A stretch of DNA of 62,982 bases, the filler included, from Reticulomyxa filosa (Eukaryota; Protista; Foraminifera): assembly GCA_000512085.1 (NCBI GenBank). It is 12 parts of 12 records of this genome, joined end to end, with 100 filler letters (N's around TTAATTAATTAA, not from the genome) between each part and the next. Parts side by side here need not be neighbours in the genome. Positions count along the whole stretch, not along the records: positions 5,967 to 11,566 come from ASPP01002677.1; 11 more parts are not named here. One strand, 5' to 3'. Of the stretch, positions 170 through 11,566 are shown in pieces. The position numbers and the translations under genes are program-made. Below the pieces are notes generated by a model. That model saw nothing but the letters and a program-made list of their open reading frames with translations, was not told the origin of the DNA and did not search any database. The first letter of the stretch is position 1; each line of letters opens with the position of its first letter.

Positions 170-1869
170 GCTGAAGAGGAAGATACAGATAGTGACATCG
201 AGTCGAAACATTCGATCAACGAAGAATTGAACCGAATGCAAAACCAACTTCGAGAGTACCAAAACGAACTATGGCAAATAAACGCGCGAATGTCTCAGAT
301 AGGCATCAATATCCAGCAGAGCAATCGCGAAGCAACAAATGAAGAACGCGTCGAGCAATTACAGCTCACAGACCGTCGTCAAAAAATAGAATCGAAAGCG
401 CACGCTGTTTGCAATAGTATCAAATACTCCAAAACAAAAATGTCACAAATCCAATTGCGCAAAAAAACCAAGAAAAGCAAAAGTGTGGTCCAAAGTGGCC
501 ATGCTAATGACCGTCCGAGTTGTAATAAGGAATCCAATCACACGAGCAATAACAAGAGTGGCAATGGTAGTGACATTGACGACGACAATGACAAAAAATA
601 CGGTGACGATAACAACACTGCCAACAAGAAAAGCAAAATCAAGCGGCCGAGCATCAGTAGTAGCACTAGTCGTCATCACCATCATCATCATCATCATCCT
701 CCTCCTCACTCGACCAACAGCAGCAGTAGTAGTAAAAGCAAAGGCAAAGCCAACACATTGAAAGCGCACGGCGACGACAGCAGTCGCGTCCGAGGGAAAA
801 CGAGTTCATCCCATTGAGAAATGTGTTGCATCAAATGGTAAAAAAGCATTTTCCAATCTTTCAAACCGTCGAGCATATCATTTTAGATTTGCAGGTTTGG
901 GTTTTTGTTTCTTATCGTTATCAAATCAATTAACATTGATTTGTTATATCATACACCCCATAAGATATCACTATCATGTACAATCATATACATGTATATA
1001 GAATCAAGAGTCGCCACAGTATTTGATCGACTTGAGCAAAATCCAGAAAGACAATGTCCGTGAACAATTTCAAGATCGCGGCTTATTGGTGGGTTGGTTC
1101 AGTGAGTTTTTGAAAGTACAAAAAGTAACCATTCATTGTAGCGGCTATATGCAATCGATTTTTGGCGACTGCGTGAATGCGATAAAGTATCGCCATTATT
1201 GCGACCCTTTTCGTGGCAGTGCGCTCCAGGACTTATCCCCGTTGGTGTCGGCAGTATCCGTGGACGGACGCACGCTGCAGCAGTTGGTCATTGCCGACAG
1301 CTCCGTCCAAGATGTGCACACCAATTTGCTGCGAAGGCACTGGCTGTCGTTGCGCGAGTTGTACTTTTACGCGCCCACGCCTGTCGACGTCAAGTACATG
1401 CACGAACACGAATTCATTTTGGTGTTGTCGCGCCAGTGCACGCAGTTGCGGAAGCTGCACTTGCCAAACATGGTCATTCCCTTTGAGGTCTTGATGATCT
1501 GGCTGCAGCAGCAGCTGGAGTTTGACATTGACCTGTTCGTTCAAAACAAGAAGCTGTGTCTAGAACAAGATGAGCAAAAGAAGCCAAAGAAATCTTGTTC
1601 CAGCGCTACCAACGTCACTGTCTCATCACGACCGATTCATGAGAAGCAGGCCAAGGATATGTTCGTTCCACCGTCGTCGTCATCCTCGTCCTCGTCCTCG
1701 TCCTCGTTGCCATTGCCATCATCATCATCTCAGCAACAACAACAACCTTTGCAACAAGTGGTAATAATGGACCCTTCCGGGCATCATTCATTAAAAAAAA
1801 GCTCCGTGTACCACGGTAATAATGTCGACGTAACTGTTCCTACTACTACTAGTGGTAATAATAATAATG

Positions 1870-1910
<41 letters not shown>

Positions 1911-2363
1911 AATAATAACAAGAATACTACCACTTCTGCCGTGAATAAACGCAAAGATGCCAATAGACATAGTAGTAACGCGAACAGTGACAAAAAAGAA
2001 GAAATGGAAAAAACCCCCGAGGCCAGCCAAAGCAGCGAAAGTTGCTTGTGGAATGAACGCAAATATGCCACTCTTGAGTCCTGTCAACAGATCATGAAAT
2101 ATGGCATGCGTTCCGTCAGAAGAACGGGTGCCAAACAAATTGACCCCAGCTTCTATCTATCCAATTGGGATAAACTCGCTCACGAAATTGTTGTGCAAGA
2201 AGTCTACGGCAAAACTCCCGCCGAATTGCAACTCGACTTGCAGACCTTTACCAAATGCCAATGGCAAGTCCAAAAGGTCAAATATTTGCCCACGCTCTGT
2301 TCTCTTCCCTTTGAACACGATAAAGAGCATTCATGTTGGGTCATTCGACGGATTATTAGATGA
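170..2363 (+). CDS. Unknown protein, 5'-truncated: coiled coil, low-complexity His/Ser/Asn tracts and a possible LRR-like region; apparent frameshift near 730-790 and intron ~895-1001
   Basis: A-run acceptor AG at 168-169 is in frame with ORF 227-817. A shifted frame from ~790 (PRENEFIPLRNVLHQ...LDLQ) ends at a GT donor at 895, and the exon from 1002 joins ORF 1023-2363, which has LRR-like segments (LQQLVIADS, LRELYF, CTQLRKLHLPN). Confidence 0.5.
1856..1920 (+). repeat. (AAT)n/(GAT) microsatellite encoding poly-Asn
   Basis: Visible directly; translates as NNNNDNNNN in ORF 1023-2363. Confidence 0.9.
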
Positions 2364-2965
2364 TATTTCTTTTTTGATACAGCTTAAATAAATCGATAAC
2401 AATATAGAAATGCAGCATATTAAAAAAAAAAAAAAATCAAACAAAATAAATTTTTTTTCCACACCCCTCACCCTCACCTTTCTTTGTTCATTTGTTCCTT
2501 TTGTTGTTGTTTTTTTTGTTGTTTTTTTTTTTTATTATTGTTTTTCAAACGGGTTCCAGGGATTAATTGCGGTTTTCATCAATGCCAAAGCATCAACCTG
2601 GCACTCGGAAAAAAAATAGAGGAAAAAAATAAACAATAAAACAACACCAAGGCCATGTGCATTTTTATCTTGGAAAAGTGTCCTTGCATGCAATAATTTT
2701 TTTTTTTGGTGTAATTTTCAGCGTCTTCGGCACGTTCATGGTTTTTTCGTTTTTTCCTTTTGCCAATTTTGCTTTTCGGATGGCAAATACACATTATTTG
2801 GTCTCACAATAGAAAAAATTTAGAATGAATATTAATTTCTTTGTAATTGATGAAATACTTAAACCAAGCTCACCTTACTGTCAGGTCAATGTAATTTGGT
2901 ACAAAAATTGTAACCGATTTGGGGCTCTCAAAAAGAGGGGGAATTTTTATGACAAAAAAACAGCG

Positions 2966-4883
2966 ATGAACTATCATAAAATATTATTTAGCTTTCTTGC
3001 CATCTTCTTTTTATCAGTGCTGTCAAAAGATGAAAATGAAGCCGATGGCACTATTTTAAAACAACCACGGCTTTACAAAGTTGCAGTGGTAGGAGGTGGC
3101 ATAGGAGGGGCTGCGTTTATTCACTTTTTTAATCAGCTACCAAAAGAGCATCAAGTTCAAATTGATGTGTATGAGGCCAATTACAAAGTTCGTCTGGAAA
3201 AAATAAATTATGTTGTTTGTTTGTTTAATGTTTCGAAAGCAAACAACACACGTAATGAAAATATGTTAAATAAAGTTGGGAGGACGAGTTAATCATTTTT
3301 TTCATGAAGATCACAAGATAGAAATCGGGGCCTCCATATTTATTGGAGAAAATTATTGGGTGCATGAATTGTCAAAAAGCTATGGTTTGACTGCAAATCG
3401 CACCCAAAGTGACCCAAAGAACAAGAAAGGTGACTTTGGAATCTGGGACACAAAGAATGAAGAGTGGATGTTTTTACCCAAGAAAAATATACTTTCTTCG
3501 TTGCTGACAGAAGAGAGCCAAATCAATCAATTGACAGATGGCTTGTACACCTTTTGGCATTTCAGTCCGAAGAAATTTTTGGATTTTGCTGCGTTGGCAA
3601 AAAATTTTATTTCGCGTTTTCGTAAGTATTACACCGAATGGACCAACCAATCATTCCCGAATGCAATTGACTTTTGGAAATTTAGCGATATGTTTGATGC
3701 CACACAACAAAACTGCTCGACATACTTGATGGAACACTTGAGTTTCATTTGGAAGAAGAGAGAGAAGAGGAGAAGGAGAAGGAGAAAAGTATTTCGTTGT
3801 TATTTATTATTCTTTTTTTTTTTTTTTAACCCAATTTTGCAACCATTTTTTTTTTTTTTTTAAAAAAAACTGTTTTCCAAAGATATCGACTCTCTTTCTC
3901 ACCCAATCTTGAACGAGTTTGTGTTGAGCTTAAACCGTGGAAATTACAACCAAAAACTTGACACAAACGCACTGGTGTGTTTAACAAGTATGGCATCGGT
4001 GGTTGGTGGCAGCAATGAAATTTACAGTATAGTAGAAGGGAATCAAGCATTGGTGGATCGAATGATCCGCAACTATATTCCTCGAGAACGAATTTTCCTG
4101 AAACATGACATATTTAGCATTAAGAAACTTAAAAAAAAAACGGATGATGATTACGGCTATCAGTTATATTTGGAAGACAAACGTAAAACGAGAGAGGATG
4201 TGCAACGAATCATTGCTTTAAAACTAGACCCGGAAAAAAAGGAAAATCGAAAATGGAGAGAACGTTTTTATGACTTTGTGGTCATTGCCACTCCTTTGTA
4301 TCAATCAAAAATTAAATTTTTGGGTGATTTTGATCAACACACGCATGAGCAGATGGCCTTGGCCAAAGATGGTCTCCCTTACAAAAAGGTTCATACTACA
4401 TTTATTCAAGGAAGATTAAATACCAAATATTTTTTCAAGTCTGAAAGTGATGAGACAAAACGAACACAAATGAGGGATTCACTGAAAACCATTGGAGTCG
4501 GAAATATATTTAACAACAAAACTTTGTTCAATTTGATTGGAAAGTGGTCTGATCACTCTGGATTGCAACACCCACTTTATAAAATTTTCAGTGACGAAGC
4601 CCTGAGTGACGAAGATCTGAACACTATTTTTATTCAAGATACACACAAATTCATCAAGAAACACGTGTGGAAAGGGGCTTATCCAAAGTACGGGATTAAA
4701 GCAGTTTTTCCTGATATTGTCTTAGATGATGGAGGGATTTATTATAATAATGCTATTGAAGCTGGTACTAGTGCTATGGAAGTTATGATACTGGCAGGAA
4801 AAAATACTGCATTGTTGTTCCACCAGCATCTTACAAAAATTCACTCAAATAGCCAACACTCACAAACTAAAGATGAATTGTGA
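2966..4883 (+). CDS. PCYOX1: Prenylcysteine oxidase/lyase (FAD-dependent), ER-retained; 3 exons
   Basis: Signal peptide, Rossmann motif VAVVGGGIGGA, YE...VGGRV across intron 3188-3275, IEIGASIF, RGNYNQ, YSIVEGNQALV, YDFVVIATPL, YYNNAIEAGTSAMEV, C-terminal KDEL. Confidence 0.88.
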
Positions 4884-5344
4884 AAATCAACATCGAACAC
4901 ATGACAACAAGCAAATAATTTCAATGATTTACCTTACTACTGTTGATTATTCTTATTCTTGCTAAAAAAATGCACAATAGAATCAAAATTTACTTTTCAA
5001 TTGTCCACAAAAAAATCTTTTTGAACAAGTCCAGGTTAAATTATTCCATTGCCACAAACATTACAAAAACGAAATGGTCCTTTTATTTTAATGTTCAAAT
5101 GTGAAATAATTAAAACAATCATTCACAATCGTTTTTGTCTATGCGATCTGCAATTCCTTAAATATGTTCCTACAAATCATACCTTTTTTTTAAGCTTTTG
5201 CATTGTGAGCGTGAAGGTGTTAAACTACCCCAAAATGAAAACAAAAGCAAGTTTAAAGTACATGGACCAAAATAGGTCATGGCATCATTCACAAGAACAA
5301 TACAAAAGGTTACAACTGTCACAAAAACAAAAGAAAGCATAGAT

Positions 5345-5966: not shown

Positions 5967-5997
<31 letters not shown>

Positions 5998-6014
5998 GGA
6001 TTACAAAGACTTAG

Positions 6015-7351
6015 GTATAATGATTTATACGTCGTTGATCCAAGTCCCCTTTTTGCTCATGACGTGCTGCTTTAAGAGGTACCAGAAAAAGGAACACATT
6101 GAAGAAGGCCAAGTAAGGGATCACAGCGTTGCTTATCATCATCACCGACGCACGACCACTGGCCATGGCGCGTCCATCCCTGCCAACCTTGGCCCTACGA
6201 TCGAACTTACCTCGCGCGACTCGGCGCTCCCCAACCAAGTCCGAGCCCTCCAGATCACTCCCATCCACATCCAAGAGGGCATCGCAGTGCAGAATGGAGA
6301 TGCCACCCCTAACACTCCTTCTTCCCCTTCCCTCGACAACGGAGGAAACTTGAACACTACAACAAGCAAAGAACAACAAAAAGGTGAAGGAGCGGAGCAA
6401 GAACATATACACAATGATGAGGATATCAATGACGGCGAAAGGAAAACAGAAACTACACAACACAATGGCGAATGGCTGATCATTTCTACTCTGCGAAATA
6501 TTACTGGAGAAACAATATCACCTCATTTGCGACAAATTAAAAAAACCACATACAAATATCACACCTTATCGAGATATGAACTTGTGAAGCAATTGGAAAA
6601 TCAAAGTTATTTCACATGCACCATATATAAATTCATAAACATATATATGTACATATTATATGTATACGTATGATATGCTAATGTGGACTGGATGATGCTT
6701 GCTCGAATAAACAACAGACTTGTCATTGTTTGAAAAATATCTCGTTTCGTCTGCATTACGACGGAGGATTTACGAACGTCGCTATCGATTTTATAGCTGG
6801 TGTCGCTATGTGGCATGGATGATTGTGATAATCGGGTGTTCGGTGGGCGTGTTTTTGACCATGTTTTATGTGGTTCGCTTCAATGTGGAAATTGAGGGGA
6901 AAATAAATATAGTTCATCAGTGTCGTCCCAATGTACTGACGGCGTGGACGTTCCTAATCGGTCCAGAATTAACTTTGCTGTCACGCAAAATGCTATGACT
7001 ACTTTTATGAAAGGTATTGACACGGGGAATATTCCTAATGCGAATGCCTTAGTTCCGGGTTGGGAATTAACTGTGGTCGATCGTTGGCTGTTAAATTGCT
7101 TTTTTTCATATTTATTGGGATTGGTGGTCTGGCAACCTTTTTTTCGCTTTTTGTGGGAGTTATATAAATATTGTCGATTTTCTCCAAATGCCATTGGCGA
7201 AACGTATTACTTTTCTCATGATTTCTGTCTTATCACAGAAGAGGAAATGTCACTCATTCAAAATCCCACCTCTTTTTATCAAGTGCTTCCTACTGAAAAA
7301 CCTGAAGAAAATCCTACTTTTGTTTACTTTCAAGATGAAAGATGTCCTTAA
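6015..7351 (+). CDS. 3' part of a multi-pass membrane protein, possibly polycystin/PKDREJ-like; intron ~6606-6717 and apparent frameshift ~6920-6960
   Basis: ORFs 6020-6673, 6720-6998 and 6920-7351 give TM helices (WCRYVAWMIVIIGCSVGVFLTMFYVVRF; RWLLNCFFSYLLGLVVWQPF), a pattern like PKD1-family TM segments. The 5' end is cut by the contig edge. Confidence 0.45.
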
Positions 7352-7842
7352 ATTACAATTACAATTATTATTTTTTTTCTTTTTTTTTTTTCGTTATTAT
7401 AACATATAATTATAGGTGCATTGCTTTTGTTGTTTGTTTATTTTTCTTTTTTTTGTACAAACCCATGCTTTATTACATTGACCGAATGTACTGACACAAA
7501 AACATACATATGTCGTGTAAATTTGAGGGTGTTGTTTGGCTATCATTGAAACGAGATGGAAAGGAGGAAAGAGAGGGTAGTATGTGTGTGTCATTGTAAA
7601 ATAGAAAAAATACGATGCTTGTATTGCAAAAAAAAACAAAGAAACGGTGATACTACTTTTTTTGTTTTGTTTTGTTTTTGCAATTAGTTTGAATACTAAC
7701 AAAAAAAAAATACCAATTGTTTCAAGGACTTGGATGAAGTACAACCACTTTCATCAATTTTTTTTCAATATATTTTTTGCTTTTTAAATAAAAAAAAAGA
7801 ATTAAACTTGTACTCCTTTACTTCCCTCAAGCAAAAAAAAAG

Positions 7843-10800
7843 TTATGATTTTTTTCTGGCAACAAAAACTATATCATATGAGGTTGTGTCTTGTGCCTCC
7901 ACACAATACCATTCACCATTTTTACTTTTTCGGGTCTCTCGACGAACATCATCCAATATTTGTTTAAATGGACATCCACTTTTGTATTTAGATATCACAA
8001 CACTTTTCATGCACTTACTCAACAATGAAAAATCTGCAACTTGATATCCTGATATAGTTGACCAAATGGTCAAAAATCCGTCACCACTATGTCCCAACGA
8101 CTGTACGTTTCCCTTTTTTTGTGTCTTTCCTCTCGTCCTTGTTGTTGCTTGAGCCGTTGGAATGTTTTTACCACGACAGACATCAATGATAAATATCTTT
8201 GGAAGATCATTGAAAGATTCCAGTATATCACAGCCAAATGATTCACGTATTCCGTCAATTGATAAAGATTTTCCATCACTCGTCACTAACATATTTCCAT
8301 TCTCTCCGTGTCCACAAATAATCATTATCAATCCATCATATTTGTGAGTGTTATCATGAAGTTTATACTTTGCAGTGAATTTGGTCAAAAATGATCGCAC
8401 ATCTTTTTCTGTCATTTGTGGAGATTCATTGGTTACAAATGTATAATTCAATTCTTGTTCAAATAATTGTTTGAAATTCTTGACATCCTCGTCTTTCACA
8501 TTTGAAAGATCATCATATTTTTTCTTATCAGTATATTTACTAATTGCAATCATCACAACTAATGCGTTCTTTATTATCTTGTATTTTTCACTTATTATTG
8601 ATTTCCAAAGTATTTTAAATGAAGGTTTTTCCATCATAAATGATTGTTGAACTGCTTCATCTGAATTGATAATATTGTCACTCATATCAACTAACTCAAA
8701 TTTCAAATTCTCTTGTTGCATTTTTTCAAGACATTGCAAATTTAAACAAGAATAAATCTGTTGAATTAACTCTTCAAATGTTAAGTCTTTCAATTTTATC
8801 AATTCCTTCGTTTCATCCACAATGATATATGCTTGTTGCTGTTATTTTTATTTTATTTTTTTGAAAAGTACAAAAATTAAACAAATTAAAAACAAAATAA
8901 AACAAAATAGATAACCAAACTTCATTGACCTTTTCCAATATCAATCTCACACGCACTGTCTTTTGATGTTGTTCACCAAACCTTGTATTAAAAACCCCGA
9001 ATGCATTTTCATAACATTTCTTTGCTTTAGTTTTATTTCCTCTTGCAAGATAAATATCTCCTAAAAGAATATAAGATTCACCAACGTGTGGATGATCATG
9101 ATCTAATTTATTTAATCTCAATTTCAATGCTTTTTCTCCATATTCAATTGATTTATTCAAATCATTCTTATTTTTAAATACGCTTGCCAAATAATGGAAA
9201 GACCAGCCAATATAAGGATCATTATCATTCAGATTTTTAGCTCTAATTTCCAATGATTTTTCAAAATATTGAATTGCTTCTTCATATTTTTCACTCTTTT
9301 CCAATATCAATCCCAGAACATCATAAGATTTTGCAAGCTCTAAATCAAAGCTATTGTTCTTATCATCGTTCAAAATTTCCAAAGCTTTGTCGACATACTC
9401 TTTAGCTTTGTTTATTTGCATTTTTCCTTTTATCCACACCAATCCCAATTCATTCAATGATATTGCAACAAATGCATGTCTTTCATCAAATTTCTTTAAT
9501 AGAATATCCAATGCCTGTTCGTGATATGCTATCGATATTTCATATTCCCCTGCTTCAAAATATGAATTTCCTAAATTATTGAACGATGCCGCAATATTTG
9601 TGTGATCTTTACCTAATTGTCCTAATGAAATTTTCGAGTGTTTTTTGTGACATTCAATTGATTTGGTATATTCTCCTTTTCTATAATGAACGTTTCCCAA
9701 GTGACAGTGACAAATGGCAACCTTTATTTGATTTTCATCCGATTTTTTCGAATAAATGTCCAATGCTTTTTTGTGATGTTTATATGCTTTGTCATATTCT
9801 GCTTTCATATAATAGACTCTTCCCAAATTATTGTAAGAATCAGCAACATCACTGTGACTACTGTCTAATTTTTTTGACCAAATGACTAGCGTTTTTTGAT
9901 AAAATTCAAGTGCTTTGTCGTATTCTCGTTTATTGTCGTGGGCAATTCCCAACATATTGTATGACTCACCAATGTCAATGTGATCTGGCTCCAATTTATC
10001 TAATCTTATTGTCAATGCTTTTTTGTGATATTCAATTGATTTATCAAATTCTCCTTTCTCATTATATACTTTTCCTAGCCAGTAAAAAGCGTGCGCAATG
10101 TCAATGTCTGGATCACTTCGTGTTTGCAATCTAACACAAAGTGCAAAACGAATCAATGAAATTGCCTCATCGAAATTTGATTTCTCGTATAAGTCTATTC
10201 CTGATTTCATAAACTTGTTTGAATCAATGGGTAATAAGACAGTGAAAACATGTTGTTGAAAAGTATAATGAATAACAGATTGTCTGGTATGAATAAGGTG
10301 TTGGGTAATGTGAAAATGACCAATTCCATTAATAACACAATCAATAACATAAACACATCCATCGATTGTAACATTATCAAATGTGATATTTTCTGAATGG
10401 AATGAATAAACAACATATGGTGAAATTACTTTTTTTTCTTTCATATATTTATGTGAGTTAATCATCATTGTAAAAGGAATGTTTTGAAAAAACCATCGAT
10501 CATTTGGTCTTGCAAGTTGATCAAGACTGGTTGAAACAATCACAATTCCGTTCCGTTTTTTTTCGACCATTTGCTCAACTATTGTGTGAGCCACTTTGTT
10601 CGCTTCATTCCATGGTTTATTTTGGTCCAATTCAATATTTTCGATATCTCGTTTTTCATCATTAGGATATTTCATTTCTTTGTCATTGTTTCCTGATTAT
10701 TTATATTTTCAATTCAATTTTTTTAAAAAAAAAAGAAAATATCTCCTTTTTTAAAATAAAAACAAAACTGTCAATGAAATGGACAAAAAAGCAAACAGGA

Positions 10801-11012
10801 TCGGTATCGAATGCACTTCGAAGTTTTTGATCGTTGTCAATACTTTGATCATTTATGTCCACGATTTTAAAATTGAATGGATTTTCTGCTTTTAAATCGG
10901 TTCTGTTGTTGATTAGCTCTTTCACCTTATCTCCCAGACTTTTCAGTGACAAGGAGGCGAATGTCACTTCAGAAATTTTATTTTCGATACAAACAAAAGC
11001 TCGAAAAGACAT
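7843..11012 (-). CDS. Multidomain caspase-family protease: beta-grasp(PB1/CIDE-N-like) - domain X - ~10 TPR - beta-grasp - C14 peptidase; 3 exons (11012-10769, 10692-8921, 8838-7843), ~1003 aa
   Basis: GT-AG introns 10768-10693 (76 nt, phase 1) and 8920-8839 (82 nt, phase 0) join three ORFs in frame. Catalytic IICGHG (His 8308-8310) and PKIFIIDVCRG (Cys 8176-8178) are present, with 42-aa kinesin-light-chain-type TPRs. Confidence 0.85.
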
Positions 11013-11024
11013 ATTAGCCAAATG

Positions 11025-11566
11025 ACTGATGACTGATGCAAAGAAAATCCAAAGGTTCCTCTCGTTTTTTTTTTGTTCCCTTTTCTTGTTGACAGTTTTT
11101 GTGTTGTTGAAGTCTGCAAACTACTCCTTTATACATTACGCCATGGAAAGTGGATTTATACTGTAGTGTTATTAGGATAGTGATAAATTACAGTTGTATC
11201 TTTGTGATGATTTGAAAAGAAAATTCTCTTTTTTTTTGCAAAGATTGAATACAACGAAGTCGAATAAACATATGTCTCTTCATTCTATCAAAATAATAAA
11301 ATATTCCATACACAGATACAGGTTTATTCGACTTCGTTGTATTCAATCTTTGCAAAAAAAAAGAGAATTTTCTTTTCAAATCATCACAAAGATACAACTG
11401 TAATTTATCACTATCCTAATAACACTACAGTATAAATCCACTTTCCATGGCGTAATGTATAAAGGAGTAGTTTGCAGACTTCAACAACACAAAAACTGTC
11501 AACAAGAAAAGGGAACAAAAAAAAAACGAGAGGAACCTTTGGATTTTCTTTGCATCAGTCATCAGT
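11025..11566. repeat. Perfect inverted repeat: 245-bp arms (11025-11269 / 11322-11566), 52-nt spacer, running to the contig end
   Basis: ACTGATGACTGATGCAAAG...CGAATAAAC is mirrored by GTTTATTCG...CTTTGCATCAGTCATCAGT. The ORF track shows near-identical peptides on both strands. Confidence 0.95.

What the first reader, a model, noticed from the sequence alone, without database searches (positions are those of the whole stretch)
7843..11012. Candidate self-contained sensor-protease: beta-grasp / domain X / TPR array / beta-grasp / active caspase in one gene
Seen: three ORFs that look like separate genes are joined in frame by two canonical 76- and 82-nt introns into one ~1003-aa protein with an intact His-Gly / Cys dyad. 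Known: 42-aa TPR arrays act as sensors in fungal and bacterial NLR-like and TPR-CHAT/caspase defence proteins, and animal initiator caspases are recruited through death folds (CARD/DED). Inferred: this is an NTPase-free, death-fold-free receptor-caspase fusion in a protist, the core of a possibly undescribed immune or cell-death pathway.
Basis: partly seen in the sequence, partly recalled or inferred. Interest (0 to 1): 0.88.

Follow-up and report, generated by a model that had tools for sequence, protein, structure and literature searches.

The report
Foraminiferan TPR–PB1-like–caspase-like protease gene
This is a real three-exon gene of the foraminiferan Reticulomyxa filosa that fuses a repeat "sensor" array and two small PB1-like (ubiquitin-fold) domains to a caspase-shaped protease. 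It is one member of a large, already partly annotated family, and its active-site pocket looks built for basic residues rather than aspartate.

Summary
On the minus strand, ATG 11012 to TAA 7843 gives three exons joined in frame by a 76-nt and an 82-nt GT..AG intron, for 1003 codons. The introns are 13-15% GC and the exons 31-35%. Against two paralogous contigs, intron indels break the frame while exon indels are multiples of three.

The order of parts is:
- a small N-terminal domain
- an unknown 155-aa domain
- a cap plus nine 42-aa TPR units
- a PB1-like beta-grasp
- a caspase-fold protease with His/Cys intact

The organism is Reticulomyxa filosa. Its caspase-like proteins are already published, and GenBank models of paralogues carry both junctions, so neither the protist caspase nor the fusion is new.

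Three things seem undescribed:
- The prodomain is PB1-like.
- The PB1-caspase exon is combined with TPR, Kelch or TRAF-zinc-finger parts in R. filosa. In other foraminifera the caspase domain follows SAM, RCC1 or Kelch parts.
- The Asp-binding Arg/Gln/Arg triad is replaced by Ser/Asp/Asp, and a conserved Arg-Gly sits in the linker. This predicts Arg/Lys specificity, as in paracaspases.

No RNA data were available. Function (sensing, oligomerisation, cell death or immunity) is inferred only.

The parts
7843..11012 (-). Whole gene: three exons, two introns, 1003 codons plus TAA
   Evidence: reading; Pfam. The paralogue locus L001 aligns end to end at 91.7% identity.
10769..11012 (-). Exon 1: start codon 11012-11010 and an 81-aa small domain (PB1-like-1, inferred)
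   Evidence: No Pfam hit. A profile-profile match to the pre-caspase domain family gives E 1.2e-4, probability 54%, over 69 columns. dN/dS is 0.56 against L002. The same N-terminus 'MSF...' is seen in P0180 and P0181.
10693..10768 (-). Intron 1: 76 nt, GT..AG, phase 1
   Evidence: GC is 13.2%. Indels of 3+7 nt against L001 and 2+1 nt against L002. The same junction is modelled in P0041, P0043, P0180 and P0181.
10226..10692 (-). Exon 2, first part: domain X (about 155 aa), fold unknown
   Evidence: Found only in six R. filosa paralogues. No hit in Pfam, PDB, PADLOC or Atlas. The AF2 model is unusable, pLDDT 41.7. dN/dS is 0.28-0.38, so it is constrained coding sequence.
8966..10225 (-). Exon 2, second part: TPR array of one capping unit plus nine 42-aa units (kinesin-light-chain / TPR_12 type)
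   Evidence: TPR_12 1.8e-74 and TPR_10 1.8e-45. Lag-42 autocorrelation peak and register. dN/dS 0.38.
8839..8920 (-). Intron 2: 82 nt, GT..AG, phase 0
   Evidence: GC is 14.6%. A 1-nt indel against L001. The same junction '..INE|QQAYIIVDETK' is in the GenBank model P0040. An intron lies directly before the PB1-caspase exon in the Kelch, TRAF and other forms too.
8599..8838 (-). Exon 3, residues 1-80: PB1-like beta-grasp prodomain (PB1-like-2)
   Evidence: In the AF2 model (mean pLDDT 90.3 over all 331 residues) this domain's 10-residue blocks score 88-97, and its elements run strand-strand-helix-helix-strand-helix-strand. VIA-align best small-domain matches are PB1 domains: 1wmh Z 8.5, rmsd 2.4, 71 aa; then MEKK3, MAP2K5, Bem1, NBR1, p62 and TFG at Z 7.6-8.4. 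Atlas feature leads are ubiquitin-fold oligomerisers, all below 0.9. There is no Pfam PB1 hit.
7858..8589 (-). Exon 3, residues 84-327: caspase-fold protease domain. It holds His177 (8310-8308), Cys221 (8178-8176), S1 positions Ser112 (8505-8503), Asp219 (8184-8182) and Asp269 (8034-8032), and the disordered basic linker 231-248 (8148-8095) with Arg236-Gly237 (8133-8128)
   Evidence: Peptidase_C14 9.3e-19. Caspase-3 Z 27.8, caspase-9 26.8, caspase-8 26.6, MALT1 21.2, metacaspase 17.5. Foldseek E 1e-14 to caspases. Atlas matches are animal caspases. S1 equivalences come from the gap-free alignment to caspase-3.
7843..7845 (-). Stop codon TAA

Best explanation
Window 7843-11012 (minus strand) is one spliced gene of the foraminiferan Reticulomyxa filosa. 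It encodes a protein of about 1003 aa with these parts in order:
- PB1-like small domain
- unknown 155-aa domain X
- nine-and-a-half kinesin-light-chain-type TPR units
- PB1-like beta-grasp prodomain
- caspase-fold cysteine protease

It belongs to a foraminifera-wide, strongly expanded family. In R. filosa a single PB1-like + protease exon is combined with different front ends (TPR, Kelch propeller, TRAF zinc finger). In other foraminifera the caspase domain follows SAM, RCC1 or Kelch parts.

Shown here:
- the gene structure
- the domains and the intact His/Cys dyad
- the caspase-like and PB1-like folds
- the family and its architectures
- replacement of the caspase Asp-binding triad (Arg/Gln/Arg) by Ser/Asp/Asp
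- a family-conserved Arg/Lys-Gly in the disordered linker between the large- and small-subunit parts of the protease (intersubunit linker)

Inferred mechanism:
1. The TPR solenoid, perhaps with domain X, binds a protein ligand or partner.
2. The PB1-like domains (a polymerising SAM domain takes this position in relatives) drive head-to-tail self-association. This brings protease domains together, as CARD and DED do for initiator caspases and BCL10 filaments do for MALT1.
3. The protease then dimerises, probably cuts its own linker after Arg236, and cleaves substrates after Arg/Lys rather than Asp.

The biological output (regulated cell death, defence, or self/non-self control in this syncytial, network-fusing amoeba) is conjecture.
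For: Gene structure:
- Reading of the sequence.
- Intron GC of 13-15% against 31-35% in exons.
- Frame-breaking indels occur only in introns: 3, 7, 1, 2 and 1 nt. The only exon indels are 21 and 12 nt.
- dN/dS is 0.28-0.56 over exon 1, domain X and the TPR array.
- Both junctions are present in GenBank models of paralogues: P0040 for junction 2; P0041, P0043, P0180 and P0181 for junction 1.

Domains:
- Pfam TPR_12 1.8e-74 and Peptidase_C14 9.3e-19.
- AF2 model of exon 3 with pLDDT 90.3.
- VIA-align: caspases Z 26.6-27.8, above MALT1 (21.2) and metacaspases (17.5). Residues 1-80 match PB1 domains at Z 7.6-8.5.

Family:
- 36 named R. filosa paralogues and 44 clusters at E<1e-30.
- Kelch, TRAF and TPR front ends.
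- A phase-0 intron directly before the PB1-caspase exon in four architectures.
- Tandem genes on L004.
- Transcriptome-derived Kelch-, SAM- and RCC1-SAM-caspase proteins in Nonionella stella and Bolivina argentea.

S1 pocket and linker:
- The alignment to caspase-3 puts Asp219 at Q161, Asp269 at R207 and Ser112 at R64.
- In 40 family members the Q161 position is Asp in 38 and the R207 position is Asp or Glu in 31. The R64 position is never Arg.
- The linker residue is Arg/Lys in 38 of 40 and is followed by Gly in 33.
- The linker is the only low-confidence stretch of the model.

That MALT1 and metacaspases use acidic residues at these positions to bind Arg/Lys is my own knowledge of those structures.
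Against: - No transcript evidence: no RNA run was listed. The GenBank paralogue models are predictions and contain implausible 27-42-nt 'introns'.
- The window's own protein was not found among annotated proteins.
- Between the window and its closest paralogue the PB1-caspase exon shows dN/dS of about 0.8-1.1 (11 synonymous and 39 non-synonymous changes). This fits relaxed constraint as well as diversifying selection.
- The PB1 assignment is structural only. Z of about 8 is near the level common for small folds, there is no Pfam PB1 match, and the canonical beta-1 Lys is not evident.
- The first small domain is linked to the second at only 54% probability.
- Domain X is unexplained.
- Nothing tests ligand binding, oligomerisation, cleavage specificity or cell death.
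Confidence: 0.55

Rival explanations
1. The protein is a scaffolded regulatory protease unrelated to death or defence. Kinesin-light-chain-type TPRs would dock it on a cargo or cytoskeletal partner of the very active reticulopodial transport system, and it would carry out limited proteolysis there.
For: The TPR units are of the kinesin-light-chain / NPHP3 type (TPR_12, TPR_NPHP3). The TPR array and domain X evolve under ordinary purifying selection, dN/dS 0.28-0.38, not the strong diversification typical of immune sensors. Paracaspase- and metacaspase-type enzymes often have non-death roles (own knowledge).
Against: The family shows features typical of defence or death systems. These are many paralogues with swapped repeat sensors, tandem copies, catalytically dead members and a fast-evolving protease exon.
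Confidence: 0.25
2. This copy is a young duplicate that is drifting towards a pseudogene or is not expressed. The architecture is real for the family but this locus has no function of its own.
For: It is 91.7% identical to the paralogue on ASPP01004204.1. dN/dS in exon 3 is about 0.9. The window's protein is absent from the annotated proteins found. No RNA run was listed. The region immediately upstream of the start codon lies in a 253-nt terminal palindrome that may be an assembly fold-back.
Against: All 1003 codons are open, with intact splice sites, dyad and S1 residues. The chance of such open frames is below 1e-12. Exon 1, domain X and the TPR array show purifying selection.
Confidence: 0.12
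3. The three ORFs are separate genes or unrelated open frames, and the GT..AG pairs are coincidental.
For: There is no direct RNA evidence. ORF 2 has its own ATG 17 nt after the first acceptor.
Against: ORF 3 has no ATG before the middle of its first folded domain. The inter-ORF stretches are 13-15% GC and carry frame-breaking indels, while the flanking exons do not. Paralogue models join the same parts. The intron position before the PB1-caspase exon recurs in four architectures. Foraminiferal transcriptomes hold sensor-caspase fusions.
Confidence: 0.03

Closest known systems
Reticulomyxa filosa 'caspase family p20 domain-containing' proteins (GenBank RFI_ models such as RFI_04677 and RFI_26638; discussed by Klim et al. 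2018, PMC5982838; used as outgroup by Krasovec et al. 2023, PMC10959488)
   Same: Same organism and same family. They are 42-88% identical. RFI_04677 has the same domain X + TPR + PB1-like + caspase order and the same exon junction.
   Different: This locus is a distinct copy (91.7% DNA identity to the nearest) and was not found among annotated proteins. The papers treat only the protease domain and call it a caspase. In the papers I could search, none describes the prodomain, the sensor fusions or the S1 pocket.
Animal initiator caspases (caspase-8, -9, -2, CED-3, Dronc)
   Same: They are the best structural matches: Z 23-28 with 204-230 aligned residues and Atlas TM 0.65-0.70. They share the His-Gly and Cys-Arg-Gly motifs, the p20/linker/p10 layout, and an N-terminal homotypic-interaction prodomain directly before the protease.
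   Different: The prodomain is a PB1-like beta-grasp, not a death fold. The Arg/Gln/Arg Asp-binding triad is Ser/Asp/Asp. The sensor repeats are in the same polypeptide rather than in a separate Apaf-1- or NLR-type adaptor.
Paracaspase MALT1
   Same: Caspase fold (Z 21.2). It has acidic residues at the S1 positions, including the Asp two residues before the catalytic Cys, and Arg specificity (own knowledge). It is activated by oligomerisation on a filament.
   Different: There are no death or Ig domains. The fold is nearer to true caspases than to MALT1. The motif is Cys-Arg-Gly rather than Cys-Arg-Lys. No Pfam or sequence evidence of orthology.
Bacterial TPR-CHAT (Csx29 of type III-E CRISPR), cyanobacterial orthocaspases and prokaryotic caspase homologues fused to TPR or WD40 (PMC3501461, PMC7475262), and fungal NLR-like proteins with TPR/WD/ANK sensors
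   Same: Repeat sensor and caspase-fold protease sit in one polypeptide, and the TPR type is the same 42-aa kind. PADLOC recognises the TPR part (1.4e-30).
   Different: The protease here is caspase-like, not CHAT or metacaspase-like (SAVED-CHAT Z 14.6). There is no NTPase and no CRISPR partner. It is a eukaryotic spliced gene with a PB1-like adaptor.
Bivalve caspase with a PB1 prodomain (Mytilus coruscus, PMC10967218)
   Same: A PB1 domain stands in the prodomain position of a caspase.
   Different: That is an animal caspase, reported with no sensor repeats, and its PB1 domain is recognisable by SMART. The foraminiferal domain is PB1-like by fold only.

Membership tests
Caspases sensu stricto (MEROPS C14A) | Caspase/hemoglobinase fold with large- and small-subunit parts joined by a linker | tested here: met
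   AF2 pLDDT 90.3. Caspase-3 Z 27.8, rmsd 2.8, 223 aa; caspase-9 Z 26.8; caspase-8 Z 26.6. Foldseek E 1.4e-14.
Caspases sensu stricto (MEROPS C14A) | Catalytic His-Gly and Cys within a QACxG-type pentapeptide | tested here: met
   His177-Gly178 and Cys221-Arg222-Gly223 are present. The pentapeptide is D-V-C-R-G, so the Gln is replaced.
Caspases sensu stricto (MEROPS C14A) | Asp-binding S1 triad (caspase-3 Arg64, Gln161, Arg207) | tested here: not met
   The equivalents are Ser112, Asp219 and Asp269 by gap-free alignment to caspase-3. The same holds family-wide: Asp in 38/40, Asp or Glu in 31/40, and no Arg at the first position.
Caspases sensu stricto (MEROPS C14A) | Cleavage after Asp | not testable with these tools
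   Needs an enzyme assay.
Initiator caspases | Death-fold prodomain (CARD or DED) | tested here: not met
   No Pfam death-fold hit. The prodomain model is a beta-grasp matching PB1 domains.
Paracaspases (MALT1-like) | Acidic S1 pocket, including Asp two residues before the catalytic Cys | tested here: met
   Asp219-Val-Cys221 and Asp269. The third position is Ser, not Asp.
Paracaspases (MALT1-like) | Death domain and Ig domains flanking the protease; closest fold to MALT1 | tested here: not met
   No such Pfam domains. MALT1 Z 21.2 is below caspases at 26.6-27.8.
Metacaspases | D-x-C-H-S-G active-site motif and metacaspase-type fold | tested here: not met
   The motif is D-V-C-R-G. Metacaspase structures score Z 15.2-17.5, well below caspases.
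PB1 domain (Pfam PF00564) | Ubiquitin-like beta-grasp of PB1 topology | tested here: met
   Secondary-structure order. The small-domain matches are mostly PB1 domains, at Z 7.6-8.5, rmsd 1.9-3.1, 66-72 aa. The Z level is modest for a small fold.
PB1 domain (Pfam PF00564) | Sequence match to the family profile | tested here: not met
   No PB1 hit for the window domain or for any of 21 paralogue domains, even at E up to 10. Atlas PB1 and CIDE-N leads are below 0.9.
PB1 domain (Pfam PF00564) | OPCA (the PB1 acidic interaction motif) and/or beta-1 Lys; head-to-tail binding | tested here: inconclusive
   An acidic stretch (Asp52, Asp55, Ser59-Asp60-Glu61; Asp60 at 90% or more conserved) lies where the OPCA motif would be. 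No clear beta-1 Lys. Binding is not testable here.
TPR repeats (TPR_12 / kinesin-light-chain type) | Tandem helix-turn-helix units matching TPR profiles, with a 42-aa period | tested here: met
   TPR_12 1.8e-74, TPR_10 1.8e-45, TPR_NPHP3 1.5e-41. Lag-42 peak and nine units plus a cap.
NLR / STAND receptors | Central NACHT or NB-ARC NTPase | tested here: not met
   No NTPase family in Pfam for any exon. By eye there is no Walker A motif in domain X.
Bacterial TPR-CHAT (Csx29-like) | CHAT-type protease domain | tested here: not met
   No CHAT Pfam or PADLOC hit on exon 3. SAVED-CHAT Z is 14.6, against 27.8 for caspase-3.

The most novel reading that the evidence does not exclude
Foraminifera have evolved their own NTPase-free, death-fold-free sensor-protease system. 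A caspase-fold protease with an acidic, Arg/Lys-directed pocket is activated by polymerising beta-grasp (PB1-like) or SAM adaptors encoded right in front of it. It is wired by exon shuffling to interchangeable repeat sensors (TPR, Kelch, RCC1). The system would serve defence or self/non-self control in giant syncytial cells whose networks fuse, a functional parallel to inflammasomes, the CBM (CARD-BCL10-MALT1) complex and fungal heterokaryon incompatibility. It would also mean that the 'caspases outside animals' used to root caspase trees are not Asp-specific enzymes.
Probability: 0.3. Interest if true: 0.75.

Novelty: new variant of a known kind. Interest (0 to 1): 0.55.

Why it matters
Reticulomyxa caspase-like proteins are cited as evidence that true caspases predate animals, and they are used as the outgroup in caspase phylogenies. 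If their S1 pocket is acidic and they cut after Arg/Lys, that argument needs rewording. The caspase/paracaspase split in specificity would then not follow the split in fold.

The family also offers a compact natural example of sensor, polymerising adaptor and protease in one chain without an NTPase switch. A PB1-like domain (SAM in relatives) stands where animals use death folds. That makes the induced-proximity principle testable in a third eukaryotic supergroup.

The gene itself is one ordinary member of that family.

Tried and rejected
- RNA evidence: the look-up of sequencing runs listed no run.
- Domain X: Pfam at E up to 10 gave only noise. There were no usable Atlas feature hits, no PDB sequence hits with a 7-sequence profile and no PADLOC hit. 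AF2 on the shallow alignment failed (pLDDT 41.7), so I did not search with that model.
- Small domains: no Pfam match, singly or over 21 members, and no PDB sequence match. Net charge of the two PB1-like domains gave no acidic/basic complementarity.
- The roughly 74-aa 'KKWxKWW' module of paralogues was tested as a possible SAM domain, with no Pfam support.
- The idea of three separate genes was rejected (see rivals).
- Contamination from an animal was rejected. The contig has R. filosa-type AT-rich short introns, and dozens of R. filosa paralogues on other contigs match it.
- The joined 1003-aa protein was never built or searched.
- Literature searches for a described TPR/Kelch/PB1 architecture of foraminiferal caspases found none in the held library. 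The Reticulomyxa genome paper itself did not turn up in any of these searches and could not be read.
Full report
**1. What is in the sequence**

The piece 5967-11566 carries three long minus-strand ORFs: 11021-10701, 10675-8813 and 8820-7843. Reading the strand gives:
- ATG at 11012.
- Exon 1, 11012-10769.
- A 76-nt intron, 10768-10693, beginning GTTTTG and ending TCAG.
- Exon 2, 10692-8921.
- An 82-nt intron, 8920-8839, beginning GTTTGG and ending ACAG.
- Exon 3, 8838-7846, then TAA.

Intron 1 splits a codon (phase 1) and intron 2 lies between codons (phase 0). The frame runs through 81+1+590+331 = 1003 codons.

Open frames of 620 and 325 codons at this base composition have chance probabilities of about 5e-23 and 2e-12.

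Every search used the references window:10770-11012:-, window:8921-10690:- and window:7846-8838:-. Residue numbers below are per exon. Adding 672 to exon-3 numbers gives the inferred full-length numbers.

**2. Are the introns real?**

No RNA run was listed for this stretch, so the test is comparative.

- Composition: the two introns are 13.2% and 14.6% GC, against 31-35% in the exons.
- The contig ASPP01004204.1 of the R. filosa assembly (locus L001) aligns over its whole 2810 nt to window 10805-8017 at 91.7% identity. In that alignment the only exon indels are 21 and 12 nt. Intron 1 has indels of 3 and 7 nt, and intron 2 has one of 1 nt.
- A more distant paralogue (L002, about 82-85% identical in the compared coding parts) has no internal indel in 837 coding nt, but 2-nt and 1-nt indels in intron 1.
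- dN/dS is 0.56 for exon 1, 0.28-0.38 for domain X and 0.38 for the TPR array. These parts are constrained coding sequence.
- ORF 3 has no ATG until the middle of its first folded domain, so it cannot be translated as a separate eukaryotic gene without losing that domain.
- GenBank gene models of paralogues use the same junctions. P0040 (RFI_04677) reads '...INE|QQAYIIVDETK'. P0041, P0043, P0180 and P0181 read '...FIHFI(H/D)|...' into domain X.

Those GenBank models are predictions, and some contain implausible 27-42-nt introns. I give them moderate weight. Taken together, I put the single-gene reading at about 0.85-0.9.

**3. Organism and family**

All close relatives are Reticulomyxa filosa proteins: 36 named hits at 42-80% identity to exon 3. 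An exhaustive search gave 686 clusters at E<=1e-3 and 44 at E<=1e-30.

The caspase-like proteins of this foraminiferan are already in the literature. Klim et al. 2018 group them with animal caspases (PMC5982838). Krasovec et al. 2023 use one as the outgroup (PMC10959488). See also PMC10565124. The window's own product was not among the annotated proteins returned.

**4. Domains**

- **TPR array.** Exon 2 residues 156-575 are one capping unit plus nine 42-residue TPR units of the kinesin-light-chain / TPR_12 type.
- **Domain X.** Exon 2 residues 1-155 occur only in six R. filosa paralogues. They match nothing in Pfam, PDB, PADLOC or the Atlas, and the domain could not be folded (pLDDT 41.7).
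- **Exon 3.** It was folded with a 40-sequence family alignment at pLDDT 90.3.
- **Protease.** Residues 84-327 form a caspase fold. The best matches are caspase-3 (Z 27.8), caspase-9 (26.8), caspase-8 (26.6), CED-3 and Dronc. These rank ahead of MALT1 (21.2), metacaspases (15-17.5), legumain and SAVED-CHAT (14.6). Foldseek and the Atlas agree.
- **PB1-like prodomain.** Residues 1-80 form a compact beta-grasp. Most of its matches are PB1 domains: Par6/PKC-iota Z 8.5, MEKK3 8.4, MAP2K5 8.1, Bem1 8.0, NBR1 7.8, p62 filament 7.6, TFG 7.6. A FERM lobe and ISG15 score at the same level. Language-model features point to ubiquitin-fold self-association modules (GRHL1_C, TDP-43_N, PB1, CIDE-N, Par3 N-terminus), all below the 0.9 level. 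No Pfam profile matches. So the domain is PB1-like by fold, not a demonstrated family member.
- **Exon 1 domain.** It aligns over its whole length to the profile of this domain with E 1.2e-4 but only 54% probability. Calling it a second PB1-like domain is an inference.

**5. The active site**

His177-Gly178 and Cys221-Arg222-Gly223 are intact. The three residues that bind the substrate Asp in caspases are Arg64, Gln161 and Arg207 in caspase-3 numbering (own knowledge). They align without gaps to Ser112, Asp219 and Asp269.

Across 40 family members:

| Position | Count |
|---|---|
| Gln161 equivalent | Asp in 38 of 40 |
| Arg207 equivalent | Asp or Glu in 31 of 40 |
| Arg64 equivalent | never Arg |
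| Linker residue 236 | Arg or Lys in 38 of 40 |
| Linker residue 237 | Gly in 33 of 40 |

An Asp two residues before the catalytic Cys, plus an acidic residue on the following loop, is the arrangement of MALT1 and metacaspases, which cut after Arg/Lys (own knowledge). The only disordered stretch of the model, residues 231-248, is the intersubunit linker. It is rich in Arg and Lys and holds the conserved Arg/Lys-Gly pair.

I therefore predict cleavage after basic residues and self-processing at Arg236. This is a caspase by fold but probably not by specificity. It is an inference from alignment, not an assay.

**6. Family architecture**

Pfam scans of long relatives show the same PB1-like + protease module behind different front ends:
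- Kelch propellers: P0045, P0048, P0051, P0012, P0054.
- A TRAF zinc finger: P0063.
- TPR: P0040 and this gene.
- An Hsp70 in a partial model: P0126.

Mapping the models on their contigs shows an intron directly in front of the PB1-protease exon in the TPR, Kelch, TRAF and other forms. It is phase 0 in four of five. This is the pattern expected of exon shuffling.

Many paralogues carry one or two extra exons of about 74 aa (the 'KKWxKWW' module) between sensor and PB1-like domain. This gene lacks them, and the module has no Pfam match.

Relatives in the foraminifera Nonionella stella and Bolivina argentea come from EukProt datasets that I take to be transcriptome assemblies (my own knowledge, not shown by a call). 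They include Kelch-caspase, SAM-caspase and RCC1-SAM-caspase proteins. In those, a SAM domain sits where R. filosa has the PB1-like domain. SAM, like PB1, is a head-to-tail polymeriser (own knowledge).

Some paralogues have lost the catalytic Cys (P0001, P0046, P0052), and two caspase genes lie in tandem on L004.

**7. Mechanism**

Shown: the parts, their order, the folds and the pocket residues.

Inferred:
1. The TPR solenoid, perhaps with domain X, binds a partner.
2. The PB1-like domains self-associate and bring protease domains together, as CARD/DED or BCL10 filaments do.
3. The protease dimerises, cuts its linker after Arg236 and then cleaves substrates after Arg/Lys.

A role in defence, death or self/non-self control is suggested only by analogy. 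The supporting family traits are swapped sensors, tandem copies, dead paralogues, and dN/dS of about 0.8-1.1 in the PB1-protease exon against the nearest paralogue. That last figure rests on only 11 synonymous and 39 non-synonymous changes.

Rivals are a non-death regulatory protease docked by its kinesin-light-chain-type TPRs, and a drifting, unexpressed duplicate.

**8. Novelty**

Already known:
- Caspase-like proteins in R. filosa.
- The fused gene model of a paralogue in GenBank.
- Repeat-sensor/caspase-fold fusions in bacteria and fungi.
- A PB1 prodomain on a mussel caspase (PMC10967218).

I found no description, in the papers I could search, of:
- the PB1-like prodomain of the foraminiferal family
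- its modular sensor architectures
- its acidic S1 pocket

I rate this a new variant of a known kind, of moderate interest.

Noticed in passing
window 11025-11277 and 11314-11566: A 253-nt inverted repeat, 99% complementary, with a 36-nt spacer. Its outer arm ends exactly at the end of the piece and its inner arm ends 13 nt upstream of the start codon. Six other R. filosa contigs have no inverted repeat of 80 nt or more. It may be an assembly fold-back or a real palindrome covering the gene's promoter and 5' leader.
   Followed up: partly
window 8017-10805 against L001:1-2810: The divergence is mosaic. Synonymous divergence is 0.14-0.19 in exon 2 but 0.07 in intron 2 and exon 3 (47/333 against 11/156 synonymous differences, Fisher p 0.025). 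This suggests a more recent exchange or gene conversion of the PB1-protease exon between paralogues.
   Followed up: partly
L003:1559-1780 and 1841-2068; L005:2028-2249; L004:3907-4185; L006:3098-3343: A module of about 74-93 aa rich in 'KKWxKWW...WLL' is encoded on its own phase-0-flanked exon(s) between the sensor and the PB1-like domain in many paralogues (two copies in P0045). It also follows the TPR array in P0042. It is absent from the window gene and has no Pfam match.
   Followed up: partly
L004:725-1687 and 1829-5108: Two caspase-family genes lie in tandem on one contig: a short PB1-like + caspase gene (320 aa) followed by a Kelch-caspase gene (952 aa).
   Followed up: no
P0126 (RFI 'heat shock protein 70, partial'), residues 1-476 and 578-652: An Hsp70 domain is followed by the PB1-like prodomain at the broken end of a partial model. 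It is either a true Hsp70-PB1-caspase fusion or two merged genes.
   Followed up: no
Alignment A1: P0001, P0046, P0052, P0027 and others: Several paralogues have lost the catalytic Cys (His, Gly or Pro in its place) or the His, while the rest of the domain is kept. They may be pseudo-protease regulators in the manner of c-FLIP.
   Followed up: no
L001:2592-2618; L002:2988-3029 and 3852-3881: The GenBank models of the paralogues splice out 27-, 42- and 30-nt stretches inside the caspase or TPR coding sequence. The stretch on L001 aligns without gaps to open reading frame in the window. These look like prediction artefacts, so the public models of this family need revision.
   Followed up: partly
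P0119, P0158, P0146, P0166 (Nonionella stella, Bolivina argentea): Other foraminifera have SAM-caspase, RCC1-SAM-caspase and Kelch-caspase proteins, and a 2694-aa Reelin-repeat protein ending in a caspase domain. A kinase-caspase (P0178) comes from an unnamed ENA contig.
   Followed up: partly
window 5967-7700, plus strand: ORFs at 6020-6673, 6720-6998 and 6920-7351 converge on the caspase gene. The region includes a 55% GC stretch around 6117-6416 and hydrophobic segments. There is no Pfam hit, and it was not identified.
   Followed up: partly
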